A DNA stretch of 64,000 bases from Styela clava (GCF_964204865.1 NC_135252.1:2170001-2234000); one strand, 5' to 3'; shown: positions 21,186-63,954, numbered from the stretch's first letter. Notes: generated from the sequence alone by a model not told the origin. Translations and numbers: made by a program.

Positions 21186-22446
21186 CTAGATATACACAGG
21201 ACGAACACAAGTACATCCCACACGGATTTCTTCTTTTCCTAGAGTGAACAATCCCGTAGAAGCATTTATAAAAAAGGCTCGAGCTTCTGCTTTAATCAAC
21301 TGAGACAAATATTCCATCGTTTCTACTCCTGTACTTGGATTGATACAGCCTTTACAAAGACATTTATTTTGAAGAATGTATTTTGGGAACCTGTAATATG
21401 AATAACCAATTATTAAAACAAATATCAGCGATGTTACTTTTTAAAGAGTTCTGTTCATACTTAACTTTATATGTATTTGCATTATAATGTTTCGATATTC
21501 TACTCATGTCGTTTTACATATATTTACTCCAATATTAAAAACTCGTACCTGTCTTTGTTGTATGTTAGTTCGTCGTCATATGGAGACAAACTTCGCAGCC
21601 CGTCCATCTTTTGATGCTTTTCAAAATATTCTCTGTTCATGACTGGACAACTCGTTACGGATCTCCTCTTTCTAGCGTGCATTTTAGGATGCTTTCTGAA
21701 GGCATTTGTTCTGGCTTCCTCCATTTCCGACATTGTTGCTTTTAGCATGTATTCTTTTGTTTTTTGCATCAACTCGCTGTTCATTATATTGTTACATTCG
21801 AGCCTGAAAAGATATTTCAATTTGATTTATGTTGCTGAAATATTTCCGTCATAAAAGAAAAAAAAAGATTATCACAGACTAACTTTAATTCATTCCTATC
21901 GTCCAGTTGTCAGAAACATTACCAAAAGAATTTAGTAGTGAGTCAATGGTGGCGCACGATAAATGCTCTTTTAGTTATCTAAATGACTCTATGTGTATAT
22001 CACGATCATAAAGTTCGCGATGACTTGTTTATACGTAGTTTAATAACGACGCATCGTTATTTAGCTCTTTTAGTTATCTATATAAGGAAGGTAGCGAATA
22101 TTCTCGACGAACGCATTGACATAAAAATACATTTTTATCTAGTTATTTGAACAATGAACAATTTGTCTTCGAAAGGAAATACTAGTTTAGAATGCCAAAA
22201 AGTAATTCAAATGAGAGAGGAATCAACTTTGACGCCACTTTTCGACATAATCTTATTTACTTACATCGTTTGTTCAGAGGCCTCTTCAGTTTTGCCTAAG
22301 AGCTGCTCACAATCAAATTCTGATTCTATTTCCGCTATGATATCTAAATGCGGGTGAAACTTTTGCTGTTGCGCCACAGTAATCTGGTACATTGCACTCA
22401 AAGTCAGTCCAATTCCTAGCACAAATACCGCTGATTGAATTTCCAT
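21186..22446 (-). CDS. IL17: IL-17 family cytokine 2, 213 aa; exons 22446-22265, 21803-21549, 21390-21186
   Basis: Signal peptide MEIQSAVFVLGIGLTLSAMYQITVA; RSLSPY...KDR|FPKYILQNKCLCKGCINP...IRVGCTCVRP is the canonical IL-17 signature. Phase-2 GT/AG introns, open frame. Confidence 0.92.
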
Positions 22447-24595
22447 TTCTTTTTTATTGTTACTTAGTCGTATATATGTATATATATATAAATAAGATTT
22501 TGAAACGTTCTTCTTGGATTTTCTCAATGAATGATTTCCAATTGGATCGAAGAGCCAAATATAAATACCCGAAAGGTCGCAACCGCGTCCTCTTGTGGTA
22601 TGAAAATAACCATTTTCAGTGTATGTATCATTTTTGAAAAAATTAAATTCCGTGATTTGGTTATGTGCGCTTTCGTCACGGTGCGTAATTTGCATATGTC
22701 GTTTTATTCCAATTAACTCATAGCATTACTTTCATAGTATAGAATGCTAATAAGTGCATTACATTAAATATAGTGCATTTCATCATATTATTAGTTATAG
22801 TAGTAATATATTAACTCCGAAATACTATTAAATTTTGATCATGTCGCTAAAGGAGTGTACAGCATTGACAGGAATCGGAAGGGTGAAAAAATAGAGCAAC
22901 CAAAGACGAAAATAATTTGATAAAAATAGAAATTCTTATCTAAGATGTCGAGCAGAAACTTGAAGAAAACGCATAAAATATTAGGCTTAAAATTGGTTGA
23001 ATACATCCGGTAGTCGCAGCTAGTATCGCGAATCCCCAAATCAGTTGTCTGGTTTCGTATTCGACTTGGAATAGCGAATGAGTCTAAAATAATTATTAAT
23101 TGGCATTCGTCAAATTAGTCGAGAATACATATAATTGGAAACGTCATAGTCTTCCTTCCTAAACGGGAAATGTCTGGCAGTTTTGTTTGGCGTGTTTAAG
23201 AATTGAGCCCAGCTAAATGACAAAGATTCGCCATGCATTTCAATAATTGTGTTTGGATATCCAGTATATAACGTGATTCAGTGTGGAAAAACAATAGTGC
23301 ATGCTCCTCAAATAGAGCCGTTTTAAAAGCAAGAATGGAAATCTGGTTTTTACTTTACCAGATTTTTCAATTCCAATTTTACTTTAAATATTTCAACTGA
23401 AACTGCTGTTAAGAACTTTGGGCAATTTAAAAACTTGACATTTACGACATAAAATTATTGATTTGAAATACAAGTATTTAAAATTAGCAGCATTTGTTAC
23501 ATATACTATAAGCAGAAGAGGTGAGAGAATTAAAAAAAAATCACTTAGCCTATTTTGGTCATGTATTGAAATATAGTAAATATATTAAAAATATTCACTG
23601 TGAGGATGATTCCTTTTGTTATTTCCTATGCATTTATATGTAATACACATCATGCTTTAAGGTGTCATTGAAATAACTCATTTACGTTGACCTGTTCCAT
23701 TCATAAAATCATCGCAGTGACGCACCTAAATGTTATGACATAATATGAGGTATGTCACTTATATTTTCACGTCTACACGTGATTTATTCTAATTATATTA
23801 TATCGTTCCCCATTATAGAATTCGACGGATGCGCATTTGACTCATTTATAAACATGTTGGAACTTAAATTTTGAATGTAATTATCCGAGAAATATATATT
23901 ACCATTTAAATCAACACATAATTTGAAGGCAACGAGGATATAAAAGCTTAAACACGAAGAAAATCGAATCATTTGTTTGTTTTGTAGCAAGGCTAGGTGT
24001 AATAATCAGCATTTCACGAATATCAGACAATATTTTATGATGACGTCATTAGACATATGTAGTCGTAACTTGCATCCGGCATCCTAAAGTATTCGCTAAC
24101 TTTGTATATTACGAGCATCCTTCAATTAATGACGATATACCGTGTCGATTTCTACTGCCTTCGTTGTCGACTTATGGTCGGGTATTATGACGTCATGTTA
24201 ATGTAAATCACTACAGATTTATTTAGTTTGGGTAAATAGGTGGTATTTCAAATTTGTGTATTCCACGTCTTGTACAATTCTATGAATTTTACCATTCACT
24301 ACCTATCTTAAACTAAACTTTTTTTGGCAAGCTTCATTATGTATTTGCAAGATGACATGACCTGGAAAAGCTATTTCAAAATAGAATTTTAGCTGAAATT
24401 TTCATAAATCTATTTTGAGGTATGTTGAAGTAAAGACAAAATGAAGTGGCAGTGATTACAAATCAATTCCTTTAAAGTTCAACTTTATAAAAGATCAGAA
24501 ACTGAAATTGATCCAATAGTATGATTTTATGGAAATTCATCGACGCTTTCTAAAATTAATTGAATTCGAATTAATAATTCTATTGGGTAGAATGT

Positions 24596-24622
24596 GGGAA
24601 TTTCCAGCGGCTGGGAAACGCC
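24596..24622. promoter_or_regulatory. Candidate NF-kappaB enhancer ~2.1 kb upstream of IL-17 gene 2
   Basis: Consensus GGGAATTTCC at 24596-24605 with a second imperfect site GGGAAACGCC at 24613-24622. Confidence 0.4.
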
Positions 24623-37987: not shown

Positions 37988-40900
37988 CTACCTATTCTTC
38001 TTATCGGCTCTTTTCTCTCTTTGACACTGAATTGAATGCTTTGTTTTTCAATGTTAATTATTATTTAATTACCTTTAGAGTCTCCAGTTTAATTTGGGCA
38101 ACTGCCCCAAACATTGCCGCCAATGTAATTTCCTGAGCAACATCTCTCTATAAAATTAAAAATAAAAACATTTCACAGAATCTGAATAAAATAATGCTGA
38201 CTAATATTTGATATATTTTTCCCTTTTAATATTAAAATTGAATCATTTCGATAATTTAGATTATAAAATTTGTACAAACCAATTCTTGTTCGATCTTTAG
38301 ATCTTTCCAAAGATTTTGTTTTTCAAATCTCTCCTCTTCTTCCTGATACAACAAAAAATTCAAACATCAAACTAAATTATATGAATAATAGGGGCTCCCG
38401 AAGTATGCGAACCAAGATGACGGACATCGGAATGTGATATGTGTACTAGGTTAGGGTTAGGCCATAATTTTAGGTATAAATACTACGGGAGGCTCTTGGC
38501 TAGTCTTCGAACTGATAATAGGACTAAAATAAGAAAAATTGGAAATAAATTATGGCCAACCCTAACCTGTTACCCATGTTACGTTCCGATGTCCGCCATC
38601 TTGGTTCGCATACTTCGGGAGCACCGAATAATATTTATAATGCACGATAATGATTACATAGATTAAATTTTGAATGATTTTTGTTACATTCACCGCTTAG
38701 ATGACATACATATAAATTACCTGTTTAATTGAAGAAAAGTACAATATCTGATCTATAAATGATAAGTTCAAAGAAGCGTGCATGGTTACAGCTCTCTCTG
38801 ATAATCATGAATCAAATTGAAAATATTCCAGAATATTACCTGTTTCTGCATCTCAAACTGCTGCTTTGCATGTCTGTTTGATACGCAATCAAAATCGTCG
38901 ATACTCTAAAAGATAGATTTGTGTATAAGATAATTAATGAAATAAATTGATTTCTTCAAAGATTATTTATTTTCACAGATAGTCAATGCATAAATACACA
39001 TACCGAAGATAGCGAAGATATTTCACTCATGGTGCTATCCTGAGAACACAAAAATGAAAATTGGAGTGAATTTATAACAGATGAAATTTCCAAAATCCGT
39101 ATTCGCTAAATAATGTAAAGATGCGCACAACGTGTCGAATTTTTGCACGAATGCACCTGCGGTTTTATAAAATAACTGCTTTTAATTAGCGCTTGAACAC
39201 GATTAAAATAAATATGGTATATTGAATAAGTTTATTTCTAATTATTTATACATTTTTAATTTGTTCTGGTTTATTAAATAATAGGTCAATATGAATTGTG
39301 TGGTCTGAGATCTCAGGATAATCCAGAATATTGTGCCATAGGTTAAATACCCACCTGAATGTTTTATATAACTTGTTTGGAAATTCAATACCAACAATAT
39401 GCACTTACCATAGACAAGGACGATACATAAGTCAAAGAATAATCCTGTTAAAATGAAAAACAATATAAAGATTAGTATTAAAATTATCGATGTAATTTAT
39501 TTAATTGGAAATTTCTGATCTTTTTATCTAAATATTTCTTTGCAGTTTTATAACCTTTTTGTTTTGCAATGTCTCGGGCCATTTGGGCACAGGGGGAAAA
39601 GAAGATTTTACAATAAGGAAAACAATAATGTACATCATAGCTAGAGCAGAGATGCTGTTAAACGATAAATATACTACCTTCGTTCAAAAAAAGCAAATGA
39701 TAAAATTACATATCATGAATACGTCCAATAGTTGGCATATAAACTTAATCTCTGCGTAACAAACAGCTAACTTCAATTAAAATGTTATATTAAAATATTA
39801 TAACAAATCTTAAATATCATATTTCGTCAAACTATTCAGACTCTTTTTCATACCGTTGATATCGAAGAAACTTCCCATTGCATATCTTCATCCTGTTGCG
39901 AAATGATGATTTAAAAATTAATGCACTACAAACCATAATTGCAAATGAAAAATGATTGTCTGTCGGTAAATGTATTTATATTCGTATGTTATAAAGTAAA
40001 TTATATTTTGGATTTATGGTATATTCTGAATAATTATTAAAAAGAAACTTTTTTGTGATATCTGCGATTTAGTCATCAAAGAGATAGAGAGAAATATAAT
40101 TTGTGTCTTTCATTTACTAGATAAAACTAAAAAATCACAAATTTTAACTGTTAATTTTTTTTTTATATCTTTGGCTTCAAACAATAACTCTTTTAAAATA
40201 TAATATAGAATGTTATGAAGGAAACTATTTGATGGACTATTTTCCTTCATCACCAATTAAAATGAAAGGAATCTCAACTGTAATAGACATAAATAAAGAA
40301 AAAATATGGTCATTGGATACAAATAATATCAACACCACTAATTGCTTCATAAACAAAGCAATAATAAACAACAATATAAAGTTATTTACATATGGCAGGG
40401 TAGTAAAATTGTTGTAATAATAATATTAAGAGCCATCATTTTTTTAATCCCATTGGTATTTAAGATCTGATTATTGCAACCGGCACCGACCCAAAGCAAA
40501 CAATGTCTCAATTTCCATATCCTGGTAAAACAAGATTACCTTCTCGTAAAACGATTCCAGCGCTATATTTTCTGATCGATGAGATTGTGACGTTATTTCT
40601 CCAAGATCATCAAAATTCTGGGAATAAATTTGTATAAATATATGTTGTTAAAGATAACGTTAATTCATCCAAGAGAATAAAACGTTACTATTAAATGTCA
40701 ATAAGATTTACATGAATATTACATTTTTTGGTGCTACTGAAGTATGCGCACAAAGATGTCGCACAACCTGAACCCAGTACTGGTACACAACCTGAATTCA
40801 GATTGTGCGCCATCTTGGTGCGCATACTTCAGGAGGTTCCATTTTTTGTTTAAACCATGGTTAACAAAGGAATAAAGTAAAATGTTGAAGCTTAAATGTA

Positions 40901-42881: not shown

Positions 42882-44540
42882 CAGTGGCGGCGCGTGGTCA
42901 TTTTGACAACCAAGGCAAGCTACTGCGGGACCAAGTCACCCCCATCTATGGGGACAGGATGAGCGCTGTAAGTTCTCCCATCATTTTATGAGTATAAAAA
43001 CCATTCCAGCGGTAACAACCAATCGGCAAAAGCGACAATTTTTAACGATAAGAAAGTGTCTTTAAAACCGGTCCAAGTCAAGGGATTAATAAATATAGAC
43101 ATAGTTTATTTTGAAACCTCTTTCAAAAGGAAAGGCAATATTTACCCAGATAAATACAATGACATATTAACAGAAACTTCGGGAAAGCAGACAAAACCTA
43201 AAATAAGGTTTAAAACGTTACTATGAAAAACGGAAAGGTAATGCAAAGATAAGGACATGCGTCGCTCACTCATAGATATATATGCTGCTAGACTTCTACT
43301 GCTTGAACATATATGCAACACGCCGCGGTTTCTTGGAAGCAAAATGCTCAATAACGCGCTGATTAAAGTCATGCATCCCAGAAATAACGTCTCTGTGAAT
43401 GGATAAAACAGTCAAGGAATTTAATCTATCTTACTTCATTATGTTTCTGAGATACGTCGTCAAAATGATGTCCAGAACTTTTGCAGACGCCGCAAAGGTA
43501 GTTACTAGAGTGTTATCTATGAGGAACCCATAGAGCGCGCAAGTTGATGTGATGTTTAAAAAAGTTTGATTGGTGTATATACAACGCAATTCATTTTCCA
43601 ATTTACCCACGTTTATCATGGGGTAAAATTTGGAGACAGTAGCCAACAAATGGATGGGAAATTGACGTGCAAATTTTGAAAAATTTTTGGGGTTCATCAA
43701 AGAGAACGCGGCAAGGTTTTCAGTGCGCGGACGATCGCCTATTTGATTCACCAGAATGTCACAGCATTCCTTTGCAGACAAAATCAAACGCTGCGTTGTT
43801 TGCCCGCGGCGTAAGGAAGCACTCCATGTGTCATCATATTTTATTGTTTCCCGGATACGAGATACAGCATCGCAGAAGTCTGAAATACACGACTGCACAG
43901 ACGCTCCATCCATTAGCCTTGACTGCAATGCGCCGTATAATACATCCACGTGATAGAATATTGTGGAGAAAAAAGCGAGAAAAAATGAAAACTAACCATC
44001 TTCTAGCAGACGCTTTAGACTTGCCGTCTTCCTCACAGAGCGTTCGTCCCAAACCGGAGAGCTCAGAATGCCATTGAAACACTCAATGAGCTCAGACCTA
44101 ATTTTGGACACGCCCTGCACCACGCGTGATTGGAAGTTCCAACGTGTTGGTGCACAAGCTGGGAGACGGCGGCTACATATCTGGCGAAGGAGGTCAGAGC
44201 GCTTCGGCGAAACGGAAAAAAATGAAGAAAACCCCGAAACATTTGCAAAAAATATACGGACGAGAGGGGTATCAAGACACATACTTTTAATAACGAGGTT
44301 AAATTGGTGTGCATGAAAATGTAAAAAATGCGCATGAGGAAAATCTTCTTTTATATAAACTTGAACACCATGTTTCGACCCACTCATGACTGCCGCGCCG
44401 GCATAAGTTTGAGCTATCAATTTTGACTTCGCGTTGTAAGGCTGTAACGCTTCTTTCAGTACAGCCGATATCCCACAAGCCGTGCGATCGACGATTGGTA
44501 CAAAGCTGTGAAATCTCTCGGTAGGTTTACCATCGCCCAA
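42882..44540 (-). mobile_element. 5'-truncated hAT (Ac-family, ZMYM1-like) transposase element at the duplication junction
   Basis: TIR-like CAGTGGCGGCGCGTG at 42882. ORFs 43992-44540 (IAQTYAGAAVMSG..HFLHFHAHQFNLVI..SPKR..APTRWN) and 43431-43949 carry Ac-type transposase motifs. Confidence 0.88.
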
Positions 44541-48900: not shown

Positions 48901-51900
48901 ATATGCCGAAGGGAATTTTTGATTTAGGGAGAATAAACATTGGCGTAAAGATGTTTGAGGTTTAAAAACACGCCATGCTGACGAAAACAATCGGAGATTG
49001 TAACAAAATACAATCGCGCACGTTATTAGCGGCCTTAAGTCTTCCAAAAATGTCAATAGGGGAAAAGATTCGACCACTAATTTAAAATTTACAGCTTTAG
49101 TCTCTTACAATTTATCTTTGAAAAAGGTTTAGTATTTAAATTGAGTAAAGTACGTTTAACTTACTCTGGAATATTAATCGGAAAGTAACAATTTTAACAT
49201 TTATTTTGGGGCTCCGTGAATAATAGTCAACATTTTCAAGGGCTCCGCAACACCAAAAGTTTGAGAACCCCTGGCTTAGATGACAAACATATAAATTACC
49301 TGTTTAATTGACGAAAAGGACAAAATTAGTAATCTATAAAAGACAAGTTTAAAAGAAGCGTGCATGGTTACAGCTCTCTCCAATAATCATGAATCAAACT
49401 GAAAATATTCCAGAATCATACCTGCTTCTGCATCTCAAACTGCTGCTTTGCATCTCTGTTTGATACGCAATCAATATCGCCAATACTCTAAAAGATAGTT
49501 TTGTGTATAAGATAATTAATGAAATAAATTGATTTCTTCAAAGAATATTTATTTTCGCAAATAGTCAATGCATAAATATACATACCGAAGATAGTGAAGA
49601 TATTTCACTCATGGTGCTATCCTGAGAAACACAAAATTGAAAACTGGAGTGAATTTATAACAGATGAAATTTACAAAATCCGTATACGCTAAATAATGCA
49701 AAGTATGCGCACAACGCGTTGAATTTTTGCACGAATGCACCTGCGTTTTTTTTATAAAATAACTGCTTCTAATTAGCTATTGAACACGATTAAAATAAAT
49801 ATGTTATATTTAATAGGTTTATTGGTCTAATGGTCTAATACAGGGGTGCACAACACGGGGCACGCGTGCCAAATTTGGCACGCCATACGCTCAAACATGG
49901 CACGCGAACTGTTTTGTAAAAAAAAAAAATTATTCATGATATACATTAAAATATCACGTTTATATCAAAATCAGCAGTTTTTCAGGACATTAAACTGTTT
50001 CAATAAATAGATATTCGTTATTATGTAATATTATTGAAATTTGTTTGTTTTACGGGAGGTAATGTCCAATACCAATGATTGTGCGCGGCACGCGACAAGA
50101 TTTTTTCGAAAAATTTGGCACGTGTCCTCATTTGAGTTGTGCACCCCTGGTCTAATAGGTCTAATTAAATATACATTTTCAATTTGTTCTGGTTTATTAA
50201 ATAATACGTCAATATGAATTGTGTGGTCTGAGATCTCAGGATAATCTAGAATATTGTGCATAAGGTTAAATACCCACCCAACTTGTTTGGAAATTCAATA
50301 CCAACAATATGCACTTACCATAGACAAGGACGATACATAAGTCAACGAATAATCCTGTTAAAATGAAAAACAATATAAAGTTTAGTATTAAAATTATCGA
50401 TGTAATTAATTTAATTGGAAATTTCTGCTCTTTTTATCTACCTATTTTCTACGCAGTTTTATAACCTTTTTGTTTTGCAGTGTCTCGGCCCATTTGGGCA
50501 CAAGGGGAAAAGTAGATTTTACAATAAGGAAAACAAAAATGTACATCATAGAGCAGATATGCTATTAAACGATACATGGACTACCTTCGTTCAAAAAAAA
50601 GCACATGATAAAATTACATATTATGAATACGTCCAATAGTTGGCATATAAACTTAATCTCTGCGTAACAAACAGCTAACTTCAATTAAAATGTTATATGA
50701 AAATATTATAACAAATCTTAAATATTATATTTCGTCAAACTATTCAGACTCTTTTCCATACCGTTGATATCGAAGAAATTTCCCATTGCATATCTTCATC
50801 CTGTTGCGAAATATGAATTAAAAATTAAAGCACTACAAATCATAATTGCAAATGAAAAATGATTGTCTGTCGGTAAATGTATTTATATTCGTATGTTATA
50901 AAGTAAATTATATTTTGAATTTATGGTATATTCTGCTTAATTATTAAAAAGAAACTTTTTCATAATATCTGCGATTTAGTCATCAAAGAGATAGAGAGAA
51001 ATATAATTTGTGTCTTCCATTTACTAGATAAAACTAAAAATCACAAATTTTAACTGTTAATTTTTTTTTTATATCTTTGGCTTCAAACAATAACTCTTTT
51101 AAAATATAATATAGAATGTTATGAAGGAAACTATTTGATGGACTATTTTCCTTCATCACCAATTAAAATGAAAGGAATCTCAACTGTAATAGACATAAAT
51201 AAAGAAAAAATATGGTCATTGGATACAAATAATATCAACACCACTAATTGCTTCATAAACAAAGCAATAATAAACAACAATATAAAGTTATTGACATATG
51301 GCAGAGTAGTAAAATTGTTGTAATGATAATACTAAGAGCCATCATTTTTTTAATCGCATTGGTATTTAAGATCTAATTATTGCAACCGGCACCGACCCAA
51401 AGCAAACAATGTCTCAATTTCCAGATCCTGGTAAAACAAGATTACCTTCTCGTAAAATGAATCCAGCGCTATATTTTCTGATCGATGAGATTGTGACCTT
51501 ATTTCTCCAAGATCATCAAAATTCTGGGAATTAATTTGTATAAATATATGTTGTTAAAGTTAACGTTAGTTCACCCAAGAGAATAAAACGTTACTATTAA
51601 ATGTCAATAAGATTTACATGAATATTACATTTTTTGGTGCTACTGAAGTATGCGCACCAAGATGTCGCACAACTTGAACCCGGTACTGGTACACAACCTG
51701 AATTCAGGTTGTGCGCCATCTTGGTGCGCATACTTCAGGAGGTTCCATTTTTTGTTTAAACCATGGTTAACAAAGGAATAAAGTAAAAATGTTGAAGCTT
51801 AAATGTATATCCGGTTGAATAATAATTGAATATTCTAGTTCGCTAAATAATTTTGCGCTATTTTCTTGCAATGGTCAACGACATCTGCTGCATATTTATT

Positions 51901-53518
51901 CAGAATAAATTTTATTGTAACAGAAAATAATCGTTGATGTATAAATGTGATTTTAATGATTTTACTCACGTCGTCCATTTTATTCCTGTTTGACTTCATG
52001 CCATTCTGAGTCTTTGAAAAGCATTTGGTAAATATCTGACAAATTAATAAGTACATTTATTACAAGCAAATGAAATATGAATTCCTATTTTTTCTGTGGT
52101 TTACCTTCATCTTTGAATTCAATCCCGTTAATTTTGTCTTGTTGTTTGTAACTTTTTTTATCTTACATTTTCCGGACAGACGTGTCCGTTTTTCGAAATT
52201 CTAAAAGAATGTAGCAATTGAGAGAAATGCGAAAGAAGAGCTTTTATCACAGGTAATTAGCGATAATGATAATTTTATGATGACTATAGTTTTCAGCACT
52301 TTCCATTGATGGAAAATTTACTGATGAATGACTTGGTGTCTTTGGTGTTGTTTTTAAACATTAAACATTTGAATCGACAAGTCATTTGTGGCAAACAGCG
52401 CTGCTGCGCAAGGGTTCAAGACTTTTTATGAAATAACGTCATTTATCCAATTATTACCTGCGCTCTGTACGAAGTGTCACAATTTTCTTGTGAGGTATAA
52501 TCATTGGTATCGAAACAATGAAGACAGTCCTAAAATACAACATACAAAAATAAAGAAGACGAGGATATCATTTGGTTTACACATAACAAAATTTATCTAA
52601 AGTGCCAGAATATTTCTAAATATGTCATTTTCAAATTTAACTTCCTAAATAATTTGCAGAAATGAAAGAGTTGGTTAATCCTTTTCTTTTTTACTCACCA
52701 TAACATTATTGATTTTTTTCATTTTTCTTCCAAACCAACTCGCAAATGCAACAATACAATGAATTGCATTTATGAAAGAAGACGATGTTTCCTCATTTTC
52801 TCCTCGTTTCTGGAAAAAAGGTCAATTACTTGAAACATTATTTGATAAGTATAGTCTTCAAAGATTGTGTCGATATGTTTCGGGAGGGGGGTACATCGGA
52901 CACTCAAATTTTGTTTACATTGCAACAGAATTTGTACATATATTACATATATCACAACTCGGAATGTTCAATGTATCATGATAAATTGTTCGAAAAGTGA
53001 TGCAATATATCTTCGGGATTTCATTATTTTTTTTAGTATCAATGATGAAGTCAAGTCAAACACTGAGAATACTTCTGATTCCGAATTTGTATAGTGATCG
53101 ACCCAAGGCAAAGTCGCTTGGCACGAACCATATACGCTGAACAAGAAGAATGACACGAGTAACCACTTGTTCAAATAAGAATCGAAACAGCGAGATGCAG
53201 ACGCTCCTAAGATGAAGTAAATAATTCAGCAAAGCTTATTGCACAAAGTTTCGGAGGCTAAATTTGTCAACAAAAAGAACAATCGCGTGCCCATGAAATT
53301 ATAACGGCCTTCACAGATAATTGATACACTTTTTCATTGTATAACCAACTTTTGAAACAGACAAATTGCACTATTCATTTGATAAAAAGTAGTTTCTCAC
53401 ATACTTGATTCCAACGTTTACGATTCTTACGACTCCGCCGTTTCCGTCCACATGAAATGCGATGGCCTCCATCTTCATCTGGCGGATCAATTACAACTTC
53501 CTGGTGATGAATATTCAT
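45987..53518 (-). CDS. Uncharacterised all-phase-0 short-exon gene, copy B, ~296 aa. Exons 53518-53405, 52809-52699, 52529-52458, 52200-52105, 52035-51970, 51523-51446, 50800-50762, 50354-50319, 49621-49586, 49487-49422, 46357-46295, 46146-46072, 46025-45987
   Basis: Exon lengths 114,111,72,96,66,78,39,36,36,66,63,75,39 nt, all AG/GT-bounded and open in phase 0. ATG in accATGa context; a TGACGTCA palindrome lies ~90 bp upstream. Confidence 0.72.
46482..49273. mobile_element. Head-to-tail dimer of a hAT (Buster-type) non-autonomous element (46482-47878 and 47887-49273)
   Basis: Each unit runs CATAGGTTCTCAAAGTG...AAGTTTGAGAACCCCTG. Outer TSD GCTTAGAT on both sides; 8-bp spacer GTATAGAG between units; empty site ccgcttagatgac at ~38692 in copy A. 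Confidence 0.92.
49841..50149. mobile_element. hAT MITE
   Basis: TIRs CAGGGGTGCACAAC / GTTGTGCACCCCTG; 8-bp TSD GTCTAATA; absent from copy A (~39235). Confidence 0.92.
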
Positions 53519-54033
53519 GGTAACAGTATCGTTAACCTTTCAATCCAACTGCTCGCTGTAAATGAATTTCTTGGATTTTAATGCAATTTACAAATATTGT
53601 TTGAATTGTGACGTCACAATCAATTACAAATGAAAATTCATTCAATAGGTTTCGAGAGTCTCATTGAGAAACTTTGCGAATTTGTGTAATATAATATGGT
53701 TATTGTTCGTAATGGTGAACGACAAATTTGAGAGAAAGTCGCCAAGATGACAAACAGAAACTTGTTGATATATTGCTACATATTGTAATGTAAACAAAAA
53801 TAGGTATATAGACAGATTTTGAAAGTAGCCTAATTCCCGACAGTCAATGTTCCATTTCCCTTTTGTGATGGAAAGTGATGTTTTTACATAAGACTACTTA
53901 TTTTGTATTCCACGCTATGTTGTTGTCGCTGAAAATATAGGCCCGAGTCAAACCTAGGGCTTGGAGTGTTGGTAATTTCAGGGTTATATCTATAATGTTT
54001 TGTGGCAAAATAATGTTTCAAGTCACACTAGAT

Positions 54034-57000
54034 CAGTGGTTCTCGAACTATTTTTACTTGCTACGCACTGAGAAAATAATAAAAAAGTTTGCGGCACACT
54101 AATAAAAAATAAAGTTAGCTTTGAACGAATTTATATTCAATAGTTAATGCGATTGATGTGCTTATTTTGAGAAACAAATAGGATTGAAACGTGGTTCCGT
54201 CGTTGCCAAGCACACCCGCATTTTGTAGTCAATTCCAAGAGGTCGCTGCCTTTTCCGCATATCATTTCAGTCAGAGCAGAAAATACGTGTTGACAGAACC
54301 AAGAAGATGCAATGGCAAGCTTATTTTGATGGCTTTTCAAATTATAAAACAATCACTCAAGCTCATAAACACACTTCATACACAAACTAAGAAAGGAGAA
54401 GAAATCACATAAAAAGTAGAATGCAGTGTCGGAAAAGTGCGACCCCTCTGGTCACACCCAAAGCACGAAGAGCAGTCTGGTTTCCAAAAGCATAACTGCC
54501 GAGAAAACTATCCACAAATGTGCTGAAATCCACCACTTTGCTAGAGGCAAGAGGAGCGACATAACTCCTCATACTCTGAGTGCTTCCGATGGGCCGCGTC
54601 ATCCATAGCGGCTTCGCCGTTGTCGAATGGGCACACCACATATTTTACTACGGGAGTACTACGACTTGATTTCCTCCAGAATCAAATTTGGCGGCAGCAT
54701 CACAGCTGTTCTAGCGGTGTGCTCTCTACAAACTACGTCAACATCGCACCTAGAAAACCTGGTTGGTGGTAGGTGAGCCAAGATATCTTCCTGCACCGAA
54801 TCGTGCCGCTACTTGATGATATTATTGACTGGGCGACAGTGATTCAAAACATGAAGAAGAGTCTCGTTCGCGTAACCACACCTGCTACAAGTCACCCGTG
54901 GTTCCACATAAGCCGTAAACCGTGTACGAACGGATCGCAGCGGCAGAAGATTTAATCGAACTTTTAAAACCCACGAAATCTGAAACTAGGCAAGAGAGAC
55001 AGACGTGGAGAGAAAGTAGTTGAGCAATCGAACTGGGAATGACAGGAAACTGTCTTCCCCTGGTACCGAAGCTCGCCCACCGCCTCAACCAACGGGTGTT
55101 GGACACTTGGGGCAACACCCGTTGACGGTCACATCAGGCGCACATCGTAACTGGTAACCGACGTCCGGCAAACCCTTGACGCCCCGGAGAAAAACGTCCA
55201 TCACCATGTTAAAAATGATTTCCGAGAGAGGGCATCCTTGACAGACTCCACTATCTGATGGAATAGAGGAGGTGTCACCATCGATAGTTCGAATGGTAAA
55301 CACGTTATCCATGTAAACGTCAGCAACCGTTTCCAATTTGTACCAGGTGCGCCAAAATGTTGCAGGACTTCGAGAATGGTTCCATGCCTTACCGACCCGA
55401 AGGCATTACGAATGTCAAGCCACGCCACATGAAGATTACGCTTATGTTTCTTGACATCCGCAATGACCGAATCAAGCATGAAAACATTTTCGAAGACGCC
55501 TTTGGAAGGAACGAAGCCCTTCTGTTCCGAGGAAATCACTTTCCAACTACATGCCCAAGACGGAAGACGACGTGCAATCACGACCGCATAGATTTTTATA
55601 CAGCGTGCGGCAGATTGCGATGGGTCTCCAGTTCCCGATGTCATTCATATAACCTTTATGCCCTTCAGGTCCTTGGGAATAAGGATTATCCCAGAGGAAC
55701 GTCATAAACTTAAACTACGCCGGAAACTCCTGCAGATTTCAAAGAGCTTGGTGAGAATTTCACCCCGTTTGTCAATGCGCTTCCAAACTCCATAGGTGAG
55801 CCATCTGGCCCCGGGGAAGTGCTAGTTTTTAAATCCCGCATGACCGAAAAAACTTTCGCCGCACTGACAGTCACGTCCTCCTCTACCACCACGTTACCGT
55901 GGTGGTGAGCGCTTTGGGACATCCACAAAGGCATCGTCCAGTCACCATCTCCGTGCGGAGCCGAATCAGTGCAATATTTCTCTTCTAGTATCGATGATGA
56001 ATGAAGTAGAGCACCGCAGACCACCAGTGAATCCTCGATGATCGATCTAACCGTGCTTCTTCGGATTTCTTCAAAAAGCCGTCCTCAACTGTGGACCGAA
56101 CCCCAGCCGATAACCACGTTCGTCGTTCAATTAGTTTTATTTGGCCCGTTTCTGGGCTGAACGTGAATAACGGTTTGGGGACCGGCGTCCGGCACTCTGG
56201 AAAACAGAGGCACGGGTAGACCAAAGTTCAAACTGTCCCTCAAGATGGCGAACGCCTCGTCTGGCGAGGACATCGAGACACATTCATTCACCAAGTGAAA
56301 AAGTTTTTGACGCAGCTCCTCCAGGTTTAGAACACTCAAAGGAACCGCACCTTCCTGGGGAGATGAACTCTGGCGATCATCCGGCGCAGAAATTAAGCTC
56401 TGATGTATCATGGTTAGCGTGGGGGTAGGAGTGGCTGCATTAATAATTTTTGCAACCACAGGAGGATCCGGAATATGGGTAACTACGGGCTCAGGCTCAA
56501 CCACGAGAATAGGCGAGGTCGAATCCGAAACCGCAAATACGACAATATCAGATCAACAGGACCGGAATTTTTGGGCTTACTCACGATCTCAATTACTATT
56601 TCAGGGCTTTGGGGCGACGGGGTAACTACAGTGAATAAGTGTGGATCAGGTTTGGGTTGGGGTGAAGCTTCGTCCCATGCCGTACGCAGCCACGACAACA
56701 ACGACTACATTTCGGAGTCCCTATTGACAAAACAGCACACGGCCTGGAGGCGCCTTTAGGCGGAAATTCCTTTATTAGAGGTCGAATTTGACTGAGGGGG
56801 GATTCTTTACGGCCATAGGAAGGGGAAGAGGTTTTACTTTACGGGGAGGAGGTTCTGGTGTCGCCAGCTTCAATTATATGGTGACAATCACCCTTGCTAC
56901 ATCGAAAAGGCAATTCAATATTATTATCAGTTATCTGCTAATAACTGCGCAGCACTTACGTCTCACAAGCATGTCCGTTGCGTGCATGCCTATGTGTTAT

Positions 57001-58003: not shown

Positions 58004-59306
58004 TTATGAAATATCCGGTTGTACACAGGTACATCCAACGCTAATTGACTGTTTTGCAAGTCGATAAGAAGATTTTCCTCCTGTTTTCTGCAAAAATATT
58101 CTTGATTGTGCAGTAACCAGATGAGAGATAAAATCCGTTGTTTCAGTTCCTAACGTCGGCTTGATGCAACCATCGCAGAGGCAGTATTTTTGGGCAATAA
58201 ATTTAGGAAAACTGTAAATAAAATAGTAATAAAGTAATTAATTATATTATTAAAAATAGCAAATTTATACTCATGCACCGTATGTAGGCTACTCATCAAT
58301 AAAATTCTATGTTCATGTTTGTATTGAGCAGTTTATGCCCATCAAACCAAAATTTGAAGTATGCGTGACCAAGTTCTAATATACATGTATGTTATACAAT
58401 ATAAAACCATTTAAAACAGTCGACTGACGAAAGTGTTCTTACCGTGTTGGATTGTAATCCAATTTTTCAGCATACGGTGACAGACTCCTCATGCCACTCA
58501 TCATGTCATTTTGTTTCAAATAAGCTTGGTTCATAACTGGACATGGAACTTTTGGGATTGATCTTTTTGGTCGAAAAATTGTCTCTTTTTTCGAATCATG
58601 ATATTCTTGTCTAGCTTTCTCCAACTCATCTTTTGATGCTGATTTGATATATTCCCGAGTTGCCCGCATAATGTTTGTTGACATTAGTAAATTGCATTCC
58701 TTACTGGTGCAAGAGAAACAAATGAATAGATTATAGATAATGAAGAGCATATAAAATTAGTTAAATACTCAATCAACGATGTATTATTCAAGGTTGTTTT
58801 TTGAAATAATCTTATAAAAATAATATGTTCTGTTTAGTTAAGGTTTTAAACTGTGAAAAGTATATAGGTTTGAATATATATATTTATACACGGTGTGTTC
58901 AGTGGTATTTTAATTTGGGCTTATATTGAGAAACACGAATCTCTTTGGAGTATATCGCAATGTTATAACACTCTTCCAAAATAAATAGGCTTAGTAGTCA
59001 CAAATAAATCAAGTTGCATTGCAAGTTAAAGCCATCTGTAAGACTAACTCGTGATAATCAGTCCAATTAGGTTTTACATAATGGTGTGAAAGAGGTCTGA
59101 ATCGGTTCGGCTATACATTTCTCTTACAACGAAATTACTTACAGTAATATATCTGTATGCTTCCTGGTTTCTCCGTACAACCCAACGCAATCAAATTCGT
59201 CCTCGTGTCGTTCTTCATCAATTTCCATTGCTGTGCTTAGTTCAAAAACGCACAATAATGTGATGAGAACGATATTACGGGAAAGTTTAGAGTTAGACTT
59301 TGCCAT
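58004..59306 (-). CDS. IL17: IL-17 family cytokine 3, 210 aa; exons 59306-59143, 58703-58443, 58211-58004 (alternative in-frame ATG at 59360)
   Basis: Signal peptide (NIVLITLLCVFELSTA); MRSLSPYAEKLDYNPTR|FPKFIAQKYCLCDGCIKP...SISVGCTCVQPDIS*; phase-2 introns. Confidence 0.92.
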
Positions 59307-61103
59307 AATACTCTTTGGTAAGATTGAAAAGTCTTGAATTTTATTTGAAATTTGCACCATCTGCTTACCGTTGAGACTTTTTCAGTTTACTTAGTCTTTA
59401 TATTCGAACTGTATTCCGCATTCATTTGTTTTATCTTATATACGCGTCTCAGAAACGTGTTGTGTAGCGAGTTTCGGAATGGACTGGATAAAAATATAAC
59501 GTAATAGTCAAATCAGTCAGATACATAACGATCAAAATTAGTTTCTTATTTTATGTAAAGCAATCAACTTAATTAACTCACGATTTTTTTACATAATGAA
59601 GTCAAGATGGTTATTACGTCAATAAAAACTAACTATGACTCGACTGCGTTGTTAGACCAAAAAGATTAAATATGTTTTCGCCGTGTGCGGAGTAATTAAC
59701 TACAACTTATTCAAATATGCAAGACATAGCTTATTACGTCTCGATAAAAGCGCAGTTTCCTGGTTGCCCTAAGTAGACGCAATATATAGATAGATGTTAC
59801 AATAGTCTATGTATGTGCGTTGTTATTAAGTGTAAAAATATATGACTGATCATATATTTCGGGTTTGATTGGTCATAATTCAATATCATGACCAAGGCCG
59901 TCGGAACGCATGTCCTATCACTAAATTCTATCTTGCAACCACTAAAAACGATTTTAGGACTTGGTTACAAATTCGAAACAGCTGAATTTAGTCTCGGTAA
60001 CAATGCCTTTTTCTTTGTCCATTCAACTATTCAATAGTCGCAAATATCAGATTGGATGGTTTGGTAATTGACGATATCTCAATTATCTATGTTTACCTAA
60101 AGCTGACGTTAATTATTTTTTCACGCTTTCTGACTTAGGATTCCATTTCCCATTCATTGGTAAACATATATTTTATCTCGGTTAAAGCAAAACTTCAAAC
60201 CTGCTTTGAAGCTAGATATTAAACTAAATAAATGGGAAATTACCGAAGGCCTCACGGTCACTGGCAATAATGCGGGAGCTTTATCTATGCTTATAGGCCC
60301 AATCAATAGACAAGACAAGAAAACATGGCATTAGTCTCTAGCGGAGATTGTAAAATTTATGAAAAGACGTAGAACATCCATCAATCGTTACATAACATTA
60401 TGAATCTATATATAATTCGGTAATTTTTATAATAACGAACCAGGTATATATATTTTTCATATTATACAGATGAGAAAATAGGTAAGTAAGATAATGTCGG
60501 TTGCTATAATCTAGATTTCTAGAGAACATTTTAGTCACAAAACGAAGTAAAACATCCTCTAGCCAGTGCCAAAAATAAATTGGTTGTGAAGTCACGCCGG
60601 AAGGAGATAATGACGAAAAACATGTTGTTGCAAAACGTATGCTAATTATTTCATTCACAAATTCACAACGTTTTCTATAGATGAAGTCTGTGGTAACATG
60701 AGTTGAATCATGCTTACTAAAAAATTCGATGCATCTAGAAATCAACCAAACAAAACCAAGCTAATAATTGAAAACTCTAAAAAGTGCGCGTTATTAATAC
60801 TGAATAAATATTTCTCTATTTTATTAAATAAATTTTATTAGTTTGTGACGCATTTTTCATTATTATGACCTAATATGTGGACTCGTAAAATGAAGCTATC
60901 ACTACGAGTATTCCTTGATTCACCGTTCGGTTTGGTTGAGTCTAACAATAAAATATAAACGAATCGAAAAATCATGGAATATTTGAAATAGGCAATGGAA
61001 AAATGACGAAATTTCTTGACGATGATGACAAAATGACAACGTTTACATTTGTATTCCTTATTCAATCCTGTTCTGGAATGGTGTCTTTAAAATAGCACAC
61101 AGT

Positions 61104-62245
61104 TCAAAGATTACCAATTATGGGATAAGCACAAGTACAACCAATATAAATTGACAATTTCTTTTTCGTCGTGAAAGTATTTAAAAATTTATCCTTTTTA
61201 TAAAAGAATTCCATACGGGTCTCCAACGGCACAGATTGTAAGGAAAGGTTTTCTTTTCTCGTCACGGGGTCGATGCACCCATTACACAAACAATGACGCT
61301 GTATAAAGAATTGGGGATATCTGTTGAAAAAGAAAATAACTCAAGTTGAGTGATCATACAGACCCACTAGGTTCAATGTCTTGAATATTACTAATGATTG
61401 AATATAATATATTCCACTTGCTCATTTGTTTGCGCGACTGCGAAAGTTACATACATATAAGTATCAGAATGGAATTTTTATCTGGATTATCCCAGTTTGA
61501 TTTTGTGCAATGTCTACATGATAAAATTGGCATTCCTTCAATATATGACGGATTCATCTTTTTTTTATTGGAGAGAGGGGACGCGTATACACACAAGCAT
61601 ATCGTCACGCTAATAAAAAAATGATTAATTCATTTTTATCAGTTTTCAGTGACAAAAGAAAAAAAAACACCCTGAGAATTTTGTCGTAGCAGGATTCAAA
61701 CTAAATTATTCGAAACTAATATTACCTGTTGGGGTCCCAATTCGGTTTTTCGGCATAAGGCGACAAGCTTCTTCGCCCATCCATTAAATTATTTTCTCTG
61801 AGATATTGAGGAGTCATCGTAGGACATTTAGTGATTTCTCTTTTTGGTCTATTTGACGGAGGGGAAAAATATTCTTGCTTTGCTCTCTCAAGAGTCATAT
61901 CGTCAGCAAATATCAAGTATTCTTTTGATTTTTTCATAACTTCAGTTTTCATTAATATTTCGCATTCCTTTCTATAAATAAAATAAAGCATAATGGTGTA
62001 TCTGGAGTTAATTTTGGCTCGATTGCATTAAATCTAGATTTTGTACAAAAATAAACTTACAGTAAAATTGTTGTTTCTTCTGCTGTTTTGCCGCGAAGTC
62101 CAATACATTCATATTCATTAAGTATTGTATTGCGATCATGTATACTAAATCTACTATCTTTTGTGGAATTCGACAATGAAAAATGGGAAAACAAAATCAC
62201 AATTAAAACACGAAGAGAAACAAAGCTGAAAGTGTTCGCGACCAT
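61104..62245 (-). CDS. IL17: IL-17 family cytokine 4, 215 aa; exons 62245-62061, 61971-61726, 61320-61104
   Basis: Signal peptide MVANTFSFVSLRVLIVILFSHFSLS; RRSLSPYAEKPNWDPNR|YPQFFIQRHCLCNGCIDP...LQSVPL...IYIGCTCAYP; phase-2 introns. Confidence 0.93.
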
Positions 62246-63191
62246 GGCGTATTTTCTGCAGTGTAAGCACGATTACAAAACTTACATTTTAAATATAACT
62301 CCATCTTTTATAGTAAAATTGCTGTACAGGAGTAATGGGAAATGGATTTTTTGGCGATTCAGAGGTCAAGGTTTCCGGGCATTTCCCCAACTATATATAG
62401 AAATATACAGAATGAGGAAGCACGCCTGAGTAACTTACTAAACGTGACATGGTAGCATTTCGAAACCTCTTGTCGAACGACAGCAAGTGGATTACATGAG
62501 TGCATTTTAAGCAAACCGTTCGAATAAGTATCCATGTTATTATTGGCCAGTGTTAAGTTGGGAAACAAATGCAATGAATACACGGGTCTTTATTTTCATA
62601 TATTCAATGAAATAGATATAAATGTAGAGATTGCAGACAAATGACGTTCTCCCTTATTCCGAAAAATAAGATCATCTCACAAAACATCAATATAATTTCA
62701 CACATTTCTAGACGATGTTTTTTATTTATGCAGTCGCGGAAATCACAGTACAGGAGTTGCGGGAATACTTCTACGGTCTATATTAGCTAATAAGGCTTGA
62801 AAGAAACATATTAAAATTTCCAAGCGGAAAGTACTAGAATACCATCGTCATCGAGTTGAATCACGATCCTGTACAGTTATATGAGTGCAATCGGTCTTTA
62901 ACTAATTGATATTGGAGGCTTGAATACTCATGCTATTAATGGGTCAGACAAATTCCAGACAGATTGGAATGATTCATAATTAGTTTTTATGTGTGACGCC
63001 AACAAAACCGTGGGGAAATTTCAGACCACAACTGAATGTATATTACTAAATGGTATTTTTGATGCTTCTATTTTTGCCACATTTGCGTTCCATGGAAATC
63101 TAATAAAATTATATAAAAGATGCAATGTTCGACTGATTCTTGGAAACATAGACTAATTATACAACGGAACATTTAGGATAAAATTTGCAAC
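62246..63191. promoter_or_regulatory. Divergent promoter region shared by IL-17 genes 4 and 5, with TATA boxes and kappaB-like sites
   Basis: Minus-strand CTATAAAAG at ~62305-62313; GGGCATTTCC at 62377-62386; GGGGAAATTTC at 63012-63022; plus-strand TATATAAAAG at ~63110. Confidence 0.55.
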
Positions 63192-63954
63192 ATGCCAATG
63201 ACTAATATCGGTAAAATGAGTTTTCTTTTTGTAATGGCGTTTCAGCAAGTAAGCAGCGTATTACCAAATGTAATGAAGGCTGAAATAACTCGGGAAAAGT
63301 TGAAATCAGAATATGATTGCATAGGGCTCATTGGAAAATCCGAAAAGGATACTAAAATGCTGTTGTAAGTACGAGTTTTTTGGAGAATAGTCAACATATT
63401 CAGATATACCTTTGCTGATCTAAATCCTGTTCTTTCAGTCCATTCTGAATATTTGGAAGTCGGAACGATTTCCAGTAGACTAATTATATAATATAAAAAA
63501 TATTCTGTCATAGAAATGCTACTAGCATTCAAGATATCATATAGATGTGTTACGATAATCAGTCCACTATATTAATAATAAAATAAAAATTAGTAAATAA
63601 TAAATTAAAGTCAAAAATCAAATGGAATATGTAATGAAATGTCATTAAAAATAAGATGACGTATCATTGTTTCGTTTAATTTTTCTACATTCGCAGACGT
63701 GATTGTGAGTTCGCCATGAAATCGAGTGTGATGACTGAAACGAAAAAGTTTATCGAAAACGCCGTTGTGGAAGAACTAACAGAGATTATACATAACTATT
63801 TTGAGAAAGATCGTGCAATTTTTGCCAGACGTAAAAGATTCACAGATATGGATTGTCCGACGCTGAATAAACAAGATTTATCATCAAACGCAAAAGAAAT
63901 GAGAAAGAGAAGTCTTGCTCCTTTTGTGTATAAACCAGATTTTAATCCTAACAG
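63192..63954 (+). CDS. IL17: IL-17 family cytokine 5, partial; exons 63192-63364 and 63697-63954, exon 3 lies beyond the window
   Basis: Exon 1 ends EYDCIGLIGKSEKDTKML|gtaagt like the paralogs; exon 2 reads RDCEFAMKSSVM...ARRKRFTDMDCP...RSLAPFVYKPDFNPNR|gt. Phase-2 introns at homologous positions. Confidence 0.88.

What the first reader, a model, noticed from the sequence alone, without database searches (positions are those of the whole stretch)
21186..63954. IL-17 paralogs built as pre-pro-cytokines with a conserved Cys-containing pro-domain and furin site
Seen in sequence: genes 2-5 all have, after the signal peptide, a ~70-90 aa region with motif E[FY][DE]CxxLxG[KE][TS]...|x[ED]CxxxM...MxxxxxY/F...A....L/ME. 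It ends in a polybasic site directly before the IL-17 domain: ARKRR/SVTSCP (gene 2), RPKR/SIPKVPCP (gene 3), RPKR/EITKCP (gene 4), ARRKR/FTDMDCP (gene 5). Established: R-x-K/R-R is the furin/proprotein convertase consensus; mammalian IL-17A/F are secreted without a cleavable pro-domain, whereas cystine-knot relatives (NGF, TGF-beta, Spaetzle) are regulated by pro-domain removal. Inference: this is a protease-activated IL-17 subfamily with a disulfide-stapled, probably helical pro-peptide acting as latency cap, folding chaperone or separate released peptide.
Basis: partly seen in the sequence, partly recalled or inferred. Interest (0 to 1): 0.85.

Follow-up and report, generated by a model that had tools for sequence, protein, structure and literature searches.

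The report
Furin-site pro-domain in sea-squirt IL-17 genes
Four neighbouring interleukin-17 genes of the sea squirt Styela clava encode an extra helical, two-cysteine segment that ends in a conserved furin-type cutting site just before the cytokine domain, and vertebrate IL-17C has a similar site at the same place, so some IL-17s are probably made as precursors that a protease must cut, which has not been tested.

Summary
The window is Styela clava chromosome DNA. It holds five IL-17 genes. Genes 2-5 have three exons with canonical GT-AG introns, both in phase 2. Each encodes a signal peptide, a 76-90 aa region with exactly two Cys, an R-x-K/R-R site, then 4-6 aa later the 'CP' cysteine and an IL-17 domain (Pfam PF06083, 46-51 bits).

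The site is not chance. A basic site in this register occurs in 17 of 21 homologous sequences, against about 1% after shuffling. These include 9 of 12 S. clava paralogs of this type on five chromosomes, a Clavelina ortholog and unidentified assemblies. No S. clava IL-17 paralog of another type has it.

AlphaFold2 predicts the region as three confident helices (pLDDT above 90), with the site in a lower-confidence loop. The genome encodes proprotein convertases.

New here: vertebrate IL-17C carries R-x-K/R-R 4-6 aa before the same Cys in caecilians, frogs, turtles, most birds, sturgeons and platypus. It is absent in teleosts and degenerate in the primates and rodents sampled. The pro-region alone shows no detectable sequence similarity to the IL-17C extension.

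Cleavage, latency and the disulfide remain inference. No paper found describes a convertase-processed IL-17. The scan's notes hold no earlier IL-17 finding.

The parts
21186..22446 (-). Gene 2, type-A IL-17. Exon 1 is 22265-22446 (signal peptide plus the first pro-Cys at 22309-22311). Exon 2 is 21549-21803 (second pro-Cys at 21794-21796; RKRR site codons at 21662-21673; CP...RSLSPY). Exon 3 is 21186-21390 (cystine-knot part plus stop).
   Evidence: The public model P0003 has the same splicing.
58004..59306 (-). Gene 3, type-A IL-17. Exon 1 is 59143-59306 (pro-Cys 1 at 59187-59189). Exon 2 is 58443-58703 (pro-Cys 2 at 58694-58696; RPKR codons at 58562-58573). Exon 3 is 58004-58211.
   Evidence: Identical to P0015 (XP_039267779.2, Styela clava). 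AF2 model m06416e816889.
61104..62245 (-). Gene 4, type-A IL-17. Exon 1 is 62061-62245 (pro-Cys 1 at 62105-62107). Exon 2 is 61726-61971 (pro-Cys 2 at 61962-61964; RPKR codons at 61839-61850). Exon 3 is 61104-61320.
   Evidence: The public model P0004 is an N-terminally truncated version.
63216..63954 (+). Gene 5, type-A IL-17. Exon 1 is 63216-63364 (pro-Cys 1 at 63318-63320). Exon 2 is 63697-63954 (pro-Cys 2 at 63704-63706; RRKR codons at 63827-63838). Exon 3 lies beyond the window end, at L003:2291-2498.
   Evidence: Public model P0002 (XP_039266357).
15698..16652 (-). Gene 1, a two-exon IL-17 paralog without the pro-region or the basic site. It serves as an internal comparator. Exon 1 starts at 16652 and ends at a phase-2 GT donor near 16458. 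Exon 2 is about 15698-15902.
   Evidence: (PF06083, 43.6 bits).

Best explanation
Genes 2-5 are functional IL-17 family genes of Styela clava that encode pre-pro-cytokines.

Shown: a signal peptide is followed by a 60-90 aa region that keeps two Cys, is predicted to form three helices, and evolves about as slowly as the cytokine domain. It ends in R-x-K/R-R, usually followed by Ser. The motif sits in a lower-confidence loop 4-9 residues before the first Cys of the IL-17 moiety.

Inferred: a furin-type proprotein convertase in the secretory pathway cuts there. That would leave a mature chain of about 105 aa with six Cys, about the same extent as mature IL-17A or IL-17F.

Further inferred, weaker: the two pro-Cys pair with each other, so the pro-piece is a separate module. 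It would help folding or dimerisation and/or mask the ligand until it is cut, as in NGF, TGF-beta and Spaetzle.

The same layout in vertebrate IL-17C (helical extension, polybasic site, CP) suggests the arrangement predates the tunicate-vertebrate split.
For: 1. Real genes. PF06083 matches every exon 3 and residues 146-223 of P0015. Splice sites are canonical with conserved phase. The models are identical to RefSeq models. The AF2 model matches IL-17A and IL-17F structures at Foldseek probability 1.0, E about 1e-7.

2. Site conservation. A basic site in this register is present in 17 of 21 homologs, 4-9 aa before the Cys. P3 varies freely (P, V, S, H, A, T, Q, K) while P4, P2 and P1 stay basic. 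P1' is Ser in 11 of the 17. The shuffled expectation is 1.2%. This covers 9 of 12 type-A paralogs on S. clava chromosomes C3, C5, C2, C19 and C1, Clavelina lepadiformis (P0010, RSKR/S) and sequences from unidentified assemblies.

3. Specificity. No S. clava IL-17 paralog of another architecture, nor gene 1, has the motif before its CP Cys.

4. Structure prediction. AF2 mean pLDDT is 83. Helices span 66-80, 83-94 and 97-112 with pLDDT 91-95. The site at 116-119 lies in a coil with block pLDDT about 70.

5. The predicted mature N-terminus aligns to within about 13 residues of the start of the human IL-17F chain.

6. Cys parity. The pro-region has 2 Cys and the mature part 6. Paralogs without a pro-region also have a 6-Cys mature part.

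7. Constraint. pN in the pro-region is 0.42-0.51, against 0.33-0.45 in the mature part and 0.43-0.66 in the signal peptide. Where dS could be computed, dN/dS is 0.3-0.4.

8. At least three convertase P-domain loci are in the genome.

9. Vertebrate IL-17C has R-x-[KR]-R at the same aligned columns: caecilians 3/3, frogs 14/14, turtles 5/5, birds 24/27, sturgeons 2/2, platypus 1/1. Its N-extension is also predicted helical, with the site at the end of the last helix.
Against: - There is no experimental or proteomic evidence of cleavage.
- One paralog (L026, on C1) lacks the site, and three homologs have only dibasic variants.
- Synonymous sites are saturated, so the selection estimates are weak.
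- I could not read model coordinates. The Cys-Cys staple, and whether the pro-region packs on the receptor-binding face, are therefore untested.
- The high AF2 confidence and a beta-bridge next to the first pro-Cys suggest the region is integrated with the core. That fits a permanent part of the ligand equally well.
- In IL-17C the extension has a single Cys and is treated in databases as part of the mature chain.
- The placental IL-17C sequences sampled keep the extension while the motif decays. That would be odd if removal of the extension were essential.
- Compared alone, the pro-region and the IL-17C extension show no sequence similarity (hhalign probability 0.2%). Shared ancestry of the two extensions is not demonstrated.
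Confidence: 0.6

Rival explanations
1. The N-terminal region is a permanent, uncleaved extension of the ligand, as IL-17B, C and D are currently treated. On this reading the basic cluster is a glycosaminoglycan-binding or receptor-binding patch, not a processing site.
For: - IL-17C orthologs often have long Arg runs, which look like heparin-binding patches.
- Placental IL-17C keeps the extension while the canonical motif shifts or decays.
- AF2 models the extension with high confidence and with a beta-bridge near its first Cys. This suggests it is part of the folded unit.
Against: - In tunicates the motif is minimal and in strict furin register: R-P-K-R, R-V-K-R, R-S-K-R, R-H-K-R, R-A-R-R. P3 is free and P1' is mostly Ser. 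It is not a diffuse basic patch.
- It sits in a predicted loop at a fixed short distance from the first Cys of the IL-17 moiety.
- IL-17 paralogs in the same genome that lack the extension also lack the motif.
Confidence: 0.25
2. The site is cut, but the pro-piece stays attached. The attachment could be disulfide bonds to the core, or tight non-covalent binding. The active or latent ligand would then be a two-chain molecule rather than a freed 105-aa IL-17.
For: - In IL-17C the extension has one invariant Cys and the rest of the chain has seven. That parity suggests a tether.
- MAFFT aligns the first tunicate pro-Cys with that IL-17C Cys.
- There is a beta-bridge next to the first pro-Cys in both AF2 models.
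Against: - Tunicate pro-regions have two Cys and the mature part has six.
- S. clava paralogs without a pro-region also have a six-Cys mature part. The pro-Cys can therefore pair with each other.
Confidence: 0.12
3. The gene models are wrong: exons 1 and 2 do not belong to the IL-17 transcripts, or the genes are pseudogenes.
Against: - The frames are intact, introns are canonical GT-AG, and intron phases are conserved in all four genes and in dispersed paralogs.
- RefSeq models in S. clava and Clavelina have the same joins.
- pN is lower than pS.
Confidence: 0.03

Closest known systems
Vertebrate IL-17C
   Same: - IL-17 domain: hhalign of the tunicate profile against the IL-17C profile gives probability 99.8%, E 2.6e-28.
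- Layout: signal peptide, a Cys, a helical extension of about 45-60 aa, a polybasic R-x-K/R-R run, 4-6 aa, then the 'CP' Cys and RS.SPW.
- The basic runs fall in the same alignment columns.
- AF2 predicts helices ending at the basic run in both.
   Different: - The IL-17C extension has one invariant Cys; the tunicate region has two.
- IL-17C has an extra 'RRKPC' Cys in the core that the tunicate proteins lack.
- IL-17C has two main helices; the tunicate region has three.
- There is no detectable sequence similarity when the extensions are compared alone.
- No paper found in the held library describes a pro-peptide or furin processing for IL-17C.
- IL-17B and IL-17D could not be fetched for comparison.
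IL-17A / IL-17F (solved structures)
   Same: - Fold and cystine-knot-like Cys pattern.
- The predicted post-cleavage chain has about the same extent as mature IL-17F and includes the CP Cys.
   Different: - IL-17A and IL-17F have no region between the signal peptide and the mature chain.
- The tunicate proteins have the CLCxGC triple-Cys arrangement.
Convertase-processed cystine-knot ligands (pro-NGF and neurotrophins, TGF-beta/BMP, PDGF/VEGF-C, Spaetzle)
   Same: - An N-terminal pro-domain followed by R-x-K/R-R directly before a cystine-knot growth-factor domain.
- This is a 'works like' analogy resting on established knowledge of those families.
- The protein-atlas feature search listed NGF/Spaetzle clusters first for the pro-region, but at 0.77-0.78, which is chance level.
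   Different: - No sequence or Pfam similarity of the pro-region to any of their pro-domains.
- The IL-17 knot lacks the third disulfide topology of the classical knots.
- Spaetzle is cut by an extracellular clip-protease cascade, not by furin.

Membership tests
IL-17 cytokine family (Pfam PF06083) | Match to the PF06083 profile above the gathering score | tested here: met
   Exon 3 of g2, g3 and g4 scores 46-51 bits against a cut-off of 24. Full-length P0015 scores 66.4 bits over residues 146-223.
IL-17 cytokine family (Pfam PF06083) | Conserved Cys pairs (C-x-C...G-C-T-C) and the RS.SP[WY] motif | tested here: met
   CLCxGC, GCTC and RSLSPY are present in g2-g5.
IL-17 cytokine family (Pfam PF06083) | IL-17 fold | tested here: met
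   The AF2 model matches IL-17A and IL-17F chains at Foldseek probability 1.0, E about 1e-7, TM (target-normalised) up to 0.77. This is a prediction, not an experimental structure.
IL-17 cytokine family (Pfam PF06083) | Signals through an IL-17 receptor (SEFIR domain) | not testable with these tools
   No binding or signalling data.
Proprotein-convertase (furin-type) substrates | R-x-[KR]-R motif with a permissive P1' residue | tested here: met
   RKRR/S, RPKR/S, RPKR/E and RRKR/F in g2-g5. A basic site in this register is in 17 of 21 homologs, and P1' is Ser in 11 of those 17.
Proprotein-convertase (furin-type) substrates | The protein enters the secretory pathway | tested here: inconclusive
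   Hydrophobic N-termini with small residues at -1 and -3 are seen by eye. AF2 models this segment as a helix. No signal-peptide predictor was available.
Proprotein-convertase (furin-type) substrates | The site is exposed and flexible | tested here: met
   Residues 113-131 of P0015 are coil with block pLDDT about 70, between the pLDDT-94 helices and the core. This is a prediction only.
Proprotein-convertase (furin-type) substrates | Convertase genes are present in the organism | tested here: met
   PF01483 P-domain hits at three loci (C10, C18, C3), up to 72.6 bits.
Proprotein-convertase (furin-type) substrates | Demonstrated cleavage at the site | not testable with these tools
   This needs expression and N-terminal sequencing or mass spectrometry.
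Orthology to vertebrate IL-17C | Closer to IL-17C than to IL-17A, B, D, E or F | tested here: inconclusive
   The only vertebrate hit of the tunicate profile was an IL-17C, but that search is word-limited. IL-17B and IL-17D sequences could not be obtained. No tree was built.
Orthology to vertebrate IL-17C | The extra core Cys ('RRKPC') and the single Cys in the extension | tested here: not met
   Tunicate type-A proteins lack the core Cys and have two Cys in the extension.
Orthology to vertebrate IL-17C | Sequence similarity of the N-terminal extension | tested here: not met
   hhalign of the extensions alone gives probability 0.2%. With the mature part included, the alignment reaches only about 15 aa upstream of the basic site.

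The most novel reading that the evidence does not exclude
A convertase-cleaved N-terminal pro-domain is an ancestral feature of an IL-17C-like lineage shared by tunicates and vertebrates. On this reading, IL-17C of most tetrapods, sturgeons and coelacanth, and about a third of the S. clava IL-17 repertoire, are made as pro-cytokines whose activity depends on furin-type processing. The step was lost in teleosts and blurred in primates and rodents, which would explain why it has gone unnoticed.
Probability: 0.4. Interest if true: 0.8.

Novelty: new variant of a known kind. Interest (0 to 1): 0.62.

Why it matters
IL-17 cytokines are generally described as secreted directly after signal-peptide removal.

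A conserved convertase step would add a layer of control (latency, tissue-specific activation) to an ancient mucosal-defence cytokine family. It would also bring IL-17 into line with other cystine-knot ligands such as NGF, TGF-beta and Spaetzle.

The vertebrate extension makes the idea testable with available reagents, namely chicken, Xenopus or turtle IL-17C. It also bears on how recombinant IL-17C-type proteins should be produced.

[quoted passage not shown] Three comparative IL-17 studies do not mention furin or pro-peptides (PMC8353272, PMC4517768, PMC5457136).

Tried and rejected
- **Word-based protein search with P0001:** it found only itself. With the tunicate alignment it found only one vertebrate protein.
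- **Pfam on exon 1, exon 2 and full-length P0015:** nothing outside the IL-17 domain.
- **Protein-atlas feature search of the pro-region:** NGF/Spaetzle and IL-17C clusters at 0.77-0.78, which is chance level. I used this only as a lead.
- **hhalign of the pro-region alone against the IL-17C extension alone:** no similarity. I do not claim sequence homology of the extensions.
- **dN/dS:** synonymous sites are saturated in most pairs. Only pN comparisons and a few ratios are usable.
- **The look-up of encoding contigs:** it was closed. The species behind the Logan proteins P0005-P0009, P0011, P0012 and P0014 are unknown.
- **Spliced models:** joined models were not sent to any search or fold tool. 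Searches used single exons by reference, or public protein ids identical to the models. Joined coding sequences were built only inside scripts, for local statistics.
- **Model coordinates and PAE:** these are not exposed, so the Cys-Cys distance and the pro-to-core contacts could not be measured.
- **Literature searches:** searches for IL-17 with furin, propeptide, proprotein convertase or prodomain gave only incidental co-mentions.
Full report
**What is in the window**

The window is AT-rich animal DNA with no N runs. It lies at G000:C3:2170001-2234000 of a 377-Mb assembly.

My spliced model of gene 3 is identical to RefSeq protein XP_039267779.2 of the ascidian Styela clava, P0015, from its second Met onward. 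Genes 2, 4 and 5 correspond to P0003, P0004 and P0002.

Pfam IL17 (PF06083) hits in the genome place five IL-17 genes in or at the edge of the window:
- Gene 1, 15698-16652, minus strand.
- Gene 2, 21186-22446, minus strand.
- Gene 3, 58004-59306, minus strand.
- Gene 4, 61104-62245, minus strand.
- Gene 5, 63216-63954, plus strand, with exon 3 just beyond the window end in locus L003.

**Gene structure**

Genes 2-5 have three exons. Both introns begin GT and end AG, and both are in phase 2 in all four genes.
- Exon 1 encodes a hydrophobic N-terminus and the first conserved Cys, in E[FY][DE]CxxLxG[KE][TS].
- Exon 2 starts with the second Cys, in [ED]CxxxM. It runs through a conserved stretch to R-x-K/R-R and then CP...RSLSP[YF].
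- Exon 3 is the cystine-knot part and matches PF06083 at 46-51 bits against a cut-off of 24.

Gene 1 has two exons. It has neither the extra region nor a basic site.

**Is the basic site more than chance?**

I profiled exon 2 (alignment A1) against 1.84 billion representative proteins. Only 14 proteins matched. Five are the S. clava models. One is from Clavelina lepadiformis, which belongs to a different ascidian order. Eight come from unidentified Logan assemblies.

Within S. clava, exon-level searches found 12 genes of this 'type A' architecture on chromosomes C3, C5, C2, C19 and C1.

Across the 21 sequences:
- 17 have a basic site in this register, ending 4-9 residues before the Cys.
- 3 have a dibasic variant: IKKR, RRKK, or RKR abutting the Cys.
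- 1, the C1 paralog L026, has none.

P4, P2 and P1 stay basic while P3 is P, V, S, H, A, T, Q or K. P1' is Ser in 11 of the 17. This is the signature of a processing motif rather than a basic patch.

After shuffling each sequence, the motif appears in that 12-residue window 1.2% of the time.

The other S. clava IL-17 architectures, and gene 1, never show it before their CP Cys. Those architectures are:
- Type B: no extension.
- Type C: a long Cys-rich first exon.
- Type D: a CC-x-C core.

**The pro-region**

By my signal-peptide estimates, the pro-region is 76-90 aa in genes 2-5 and 62 aa in Clavelina. It always has two Cys, against six in the remainder. No signal-peptide predictor was available.

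Paralogs without an extension also have a six-Cys mature part. The two extra Cys can therefore pair with each other. That is inference; I could not measure it.

Non-synonymous divergence among genes 2-5 is 0.42-0.51 in the pro-region. It is 0.33-0.45 in the mature part and 0.43-0.66 in the signal peptide. Synonymous sites are mostly saturated. Where a ratio could be computed it is 0.3-0.4. The region is constrained, not a spacer.

AlphaFold2 was run on P0015 with a 33-row alignment. Mean pLDDT is 83 and pTM is 0.70. It predicts helices at 66-80, 83-94 and 97-112 with block pLDDT 91-95. A coil with pLDDT about 70 follows and contains RPKR (116-119). The IL-17 beta core comes after that.

Foldseek matches the core to IL-17A and IL-17F at probability 1.0, covering about 100 columns. 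Nothing in the top hits covers the helices.

phmmer against PDB sequences aligns residues 111-225 of P0001 to positions 14-135 of a human IL-17F chain. The predicted post-cleavage chain therefore has about the extent of mature IL-17F.

The genome carries at least three proprotein-convertase P-domain loci.

**Vertebrate IL-17C**

The only vertebrate protein reached by the tunicate profile was a caecilian IL-17C, P0021. It has RGRRQRR five residues before its CP Cys.

I then collected 120 IL-17C sequences. Counts of R-x-[KR]-R within 16 aa before that Cys:

| Group | With motif | Distance to Cys |
|---|---|---|
| Caecilians | 3/3 | 5 |
| Frogs | 14/14 | 5-6 |
| Turtles | 5/5 | 4 |
| Birds | 24/27 | mostly 4-6 (3-8) |
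| Sturgeons | 2/2 | 5 |
| Platypus | 1/1 | 6 |
| Salamanders | 2/3 | 5 |
| Squamates and tuatara | 3/5 | 5 |
| Marsupials | 4/7 | 6-8 |
| Placentals | 8/17 | 8-9 |
| Teleosts | 0/24 | none |
| Shark, gar, bowfin, bichir | 0/4 | none |

None of the sampled primates or rodents has the motif.

MAFFT places the tunicate and IL-17C basic runs in the same columns. It also aligns the first tunicate pro-Cys with the single invariant Cys of the IL-17C extension.

Profile-profile comparison of the full proteins gives probability 99.8%, E 2.6e-28. The alignment starts about 15 residues upstream of the basic site.

AlphaFold2 on the caecilian IL-17C also predicts a confident helical extension, with helices at 55-70 and 80-95. 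The basic run sits at the end of the last helix, ahead of a low-confidence loop.

When the extensions are compared alone, without the basic run and the core, hhalign finds nothing (probability 0.2%). The architecture and the position of the site are shared. Common ancestry of the extensions is plausible but not demonstrated.

**Literature**

Full-text searches combined IL-17 or IL-17C with furin, propeptide, proprotein convertase, prodomain, dibasic or polybasic. They returned only incidental co-mentions.

Three comparative IL-17 studies contain neither 'furin' nor 'propeptide' (PMC8353272, PMC4517768, PMC5457136). A review of pro-domains in human growth factors and cytokines does not mention IL-17 (PMC8589418).

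The library covers open-access papers only. This is absence of evidence within that library, not proof of novelty.

**Interpretation**

What is shown:
- These are real, intact IL-17 genes.
- They have a conserved, constrained, predicted-helical two-Cys region.
- They have a conserved furin-register motif in a predicted loop at a fixed short distance from the IL-17 moiety.
- The organism has the enzymes.
- Vertebrate IL-17C has the same layout.

What is inferred:
- The site is cut in the secretory pathway.
- The two pro-Cys form a staple.
- The pro-piece acts as a folding aid or latency cap.

The main rival is that the region is a permanent extension with a basic binding patch. A sub-variant is that it is cut but remains attached. 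The single Cys in the IL-17C extension, and the beta-bridge next to the first pro-Cys in both models, keep that option open.

- Joined spliced models were not sent to any search or fold tool. Exon references or public protein ids were used instead. Joined coding sequences were built only inside scripts.
- IL-17B and IL-17D could not be fetched.

**Verdict**

The finding is a new variant of a known kind: an IL-17 with a convertase-type pro-domain. It is probably not tunicate-specific.

Interest is moderate to high. The hypothesis is directly testable and would revise how IL-17C-type cytokines are thought to mature. All functional claims remain computational.

Noticed in passing
window 15698-16652 (-): Gene 1 is a two-exon IL-17 paralog without the pro-region. 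Its core reads C-A-S-K-Y-C, so the middle Cys of CLCxGC is replaced. The RS.SPW motif is degenerate (STNSLR). This leaves an odd number of Cys (five) in the secreted part.
   Followed up: partly
G000 whole genome; loci L008-L037: S. clava has at least 32 IL-17 exon-3 hits, in four architectures. Type A has the pro-region plus basic site (12 genes). Type B has no extension (C5 15.06-15.08 Mb, plus gene 1). Type C has a long Cys-rich first exon (cluster at C3 14.84-14.87 Mb, and C10). Type D has a CC-x-C core (C2 18.35-18.38 Mb, C8, C10).
   Followed up: partly
L034:1504-1755 and L035:1504-1749 (chromosome C5): Two type-A paralogs end in a long poly-Arg/Lys C-terminal tail after the GC-x-C motif. 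Their basic site abuts a 'CK' instead of 'CP'.
   Followed up: no
window about 40700-42200 and 51800-53100: This is a duplicated block: ORFs of 85 and 73 aa are identical over about 70 residues. Pfam finds nothing in the ORF at 40892-41149.
   Followed up: partly
window 54000-57000 (GC rises to 0.46): A retrotransposon fragment lies between genes 2 and 3. The ORF at 55201-55644 (-) matches reverse transcriptase RVT_1 (37 bits). The transposase-looking ORFs at 43431-44540 (-) gave no Pfam hit.
   Followed up: partly
P0021-P0140 (vertebrate IL-17C): The IL-17C N-terminal extension has one invariant Cys and a conserved W...LV..LE helix. The polybasic run before the CP Cys is present in nearly all amphibians, turtles and birds, absent in all 24 teleosts, and shifted 3-4 residues further from the Cys in placentals.
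   Followed up: yes
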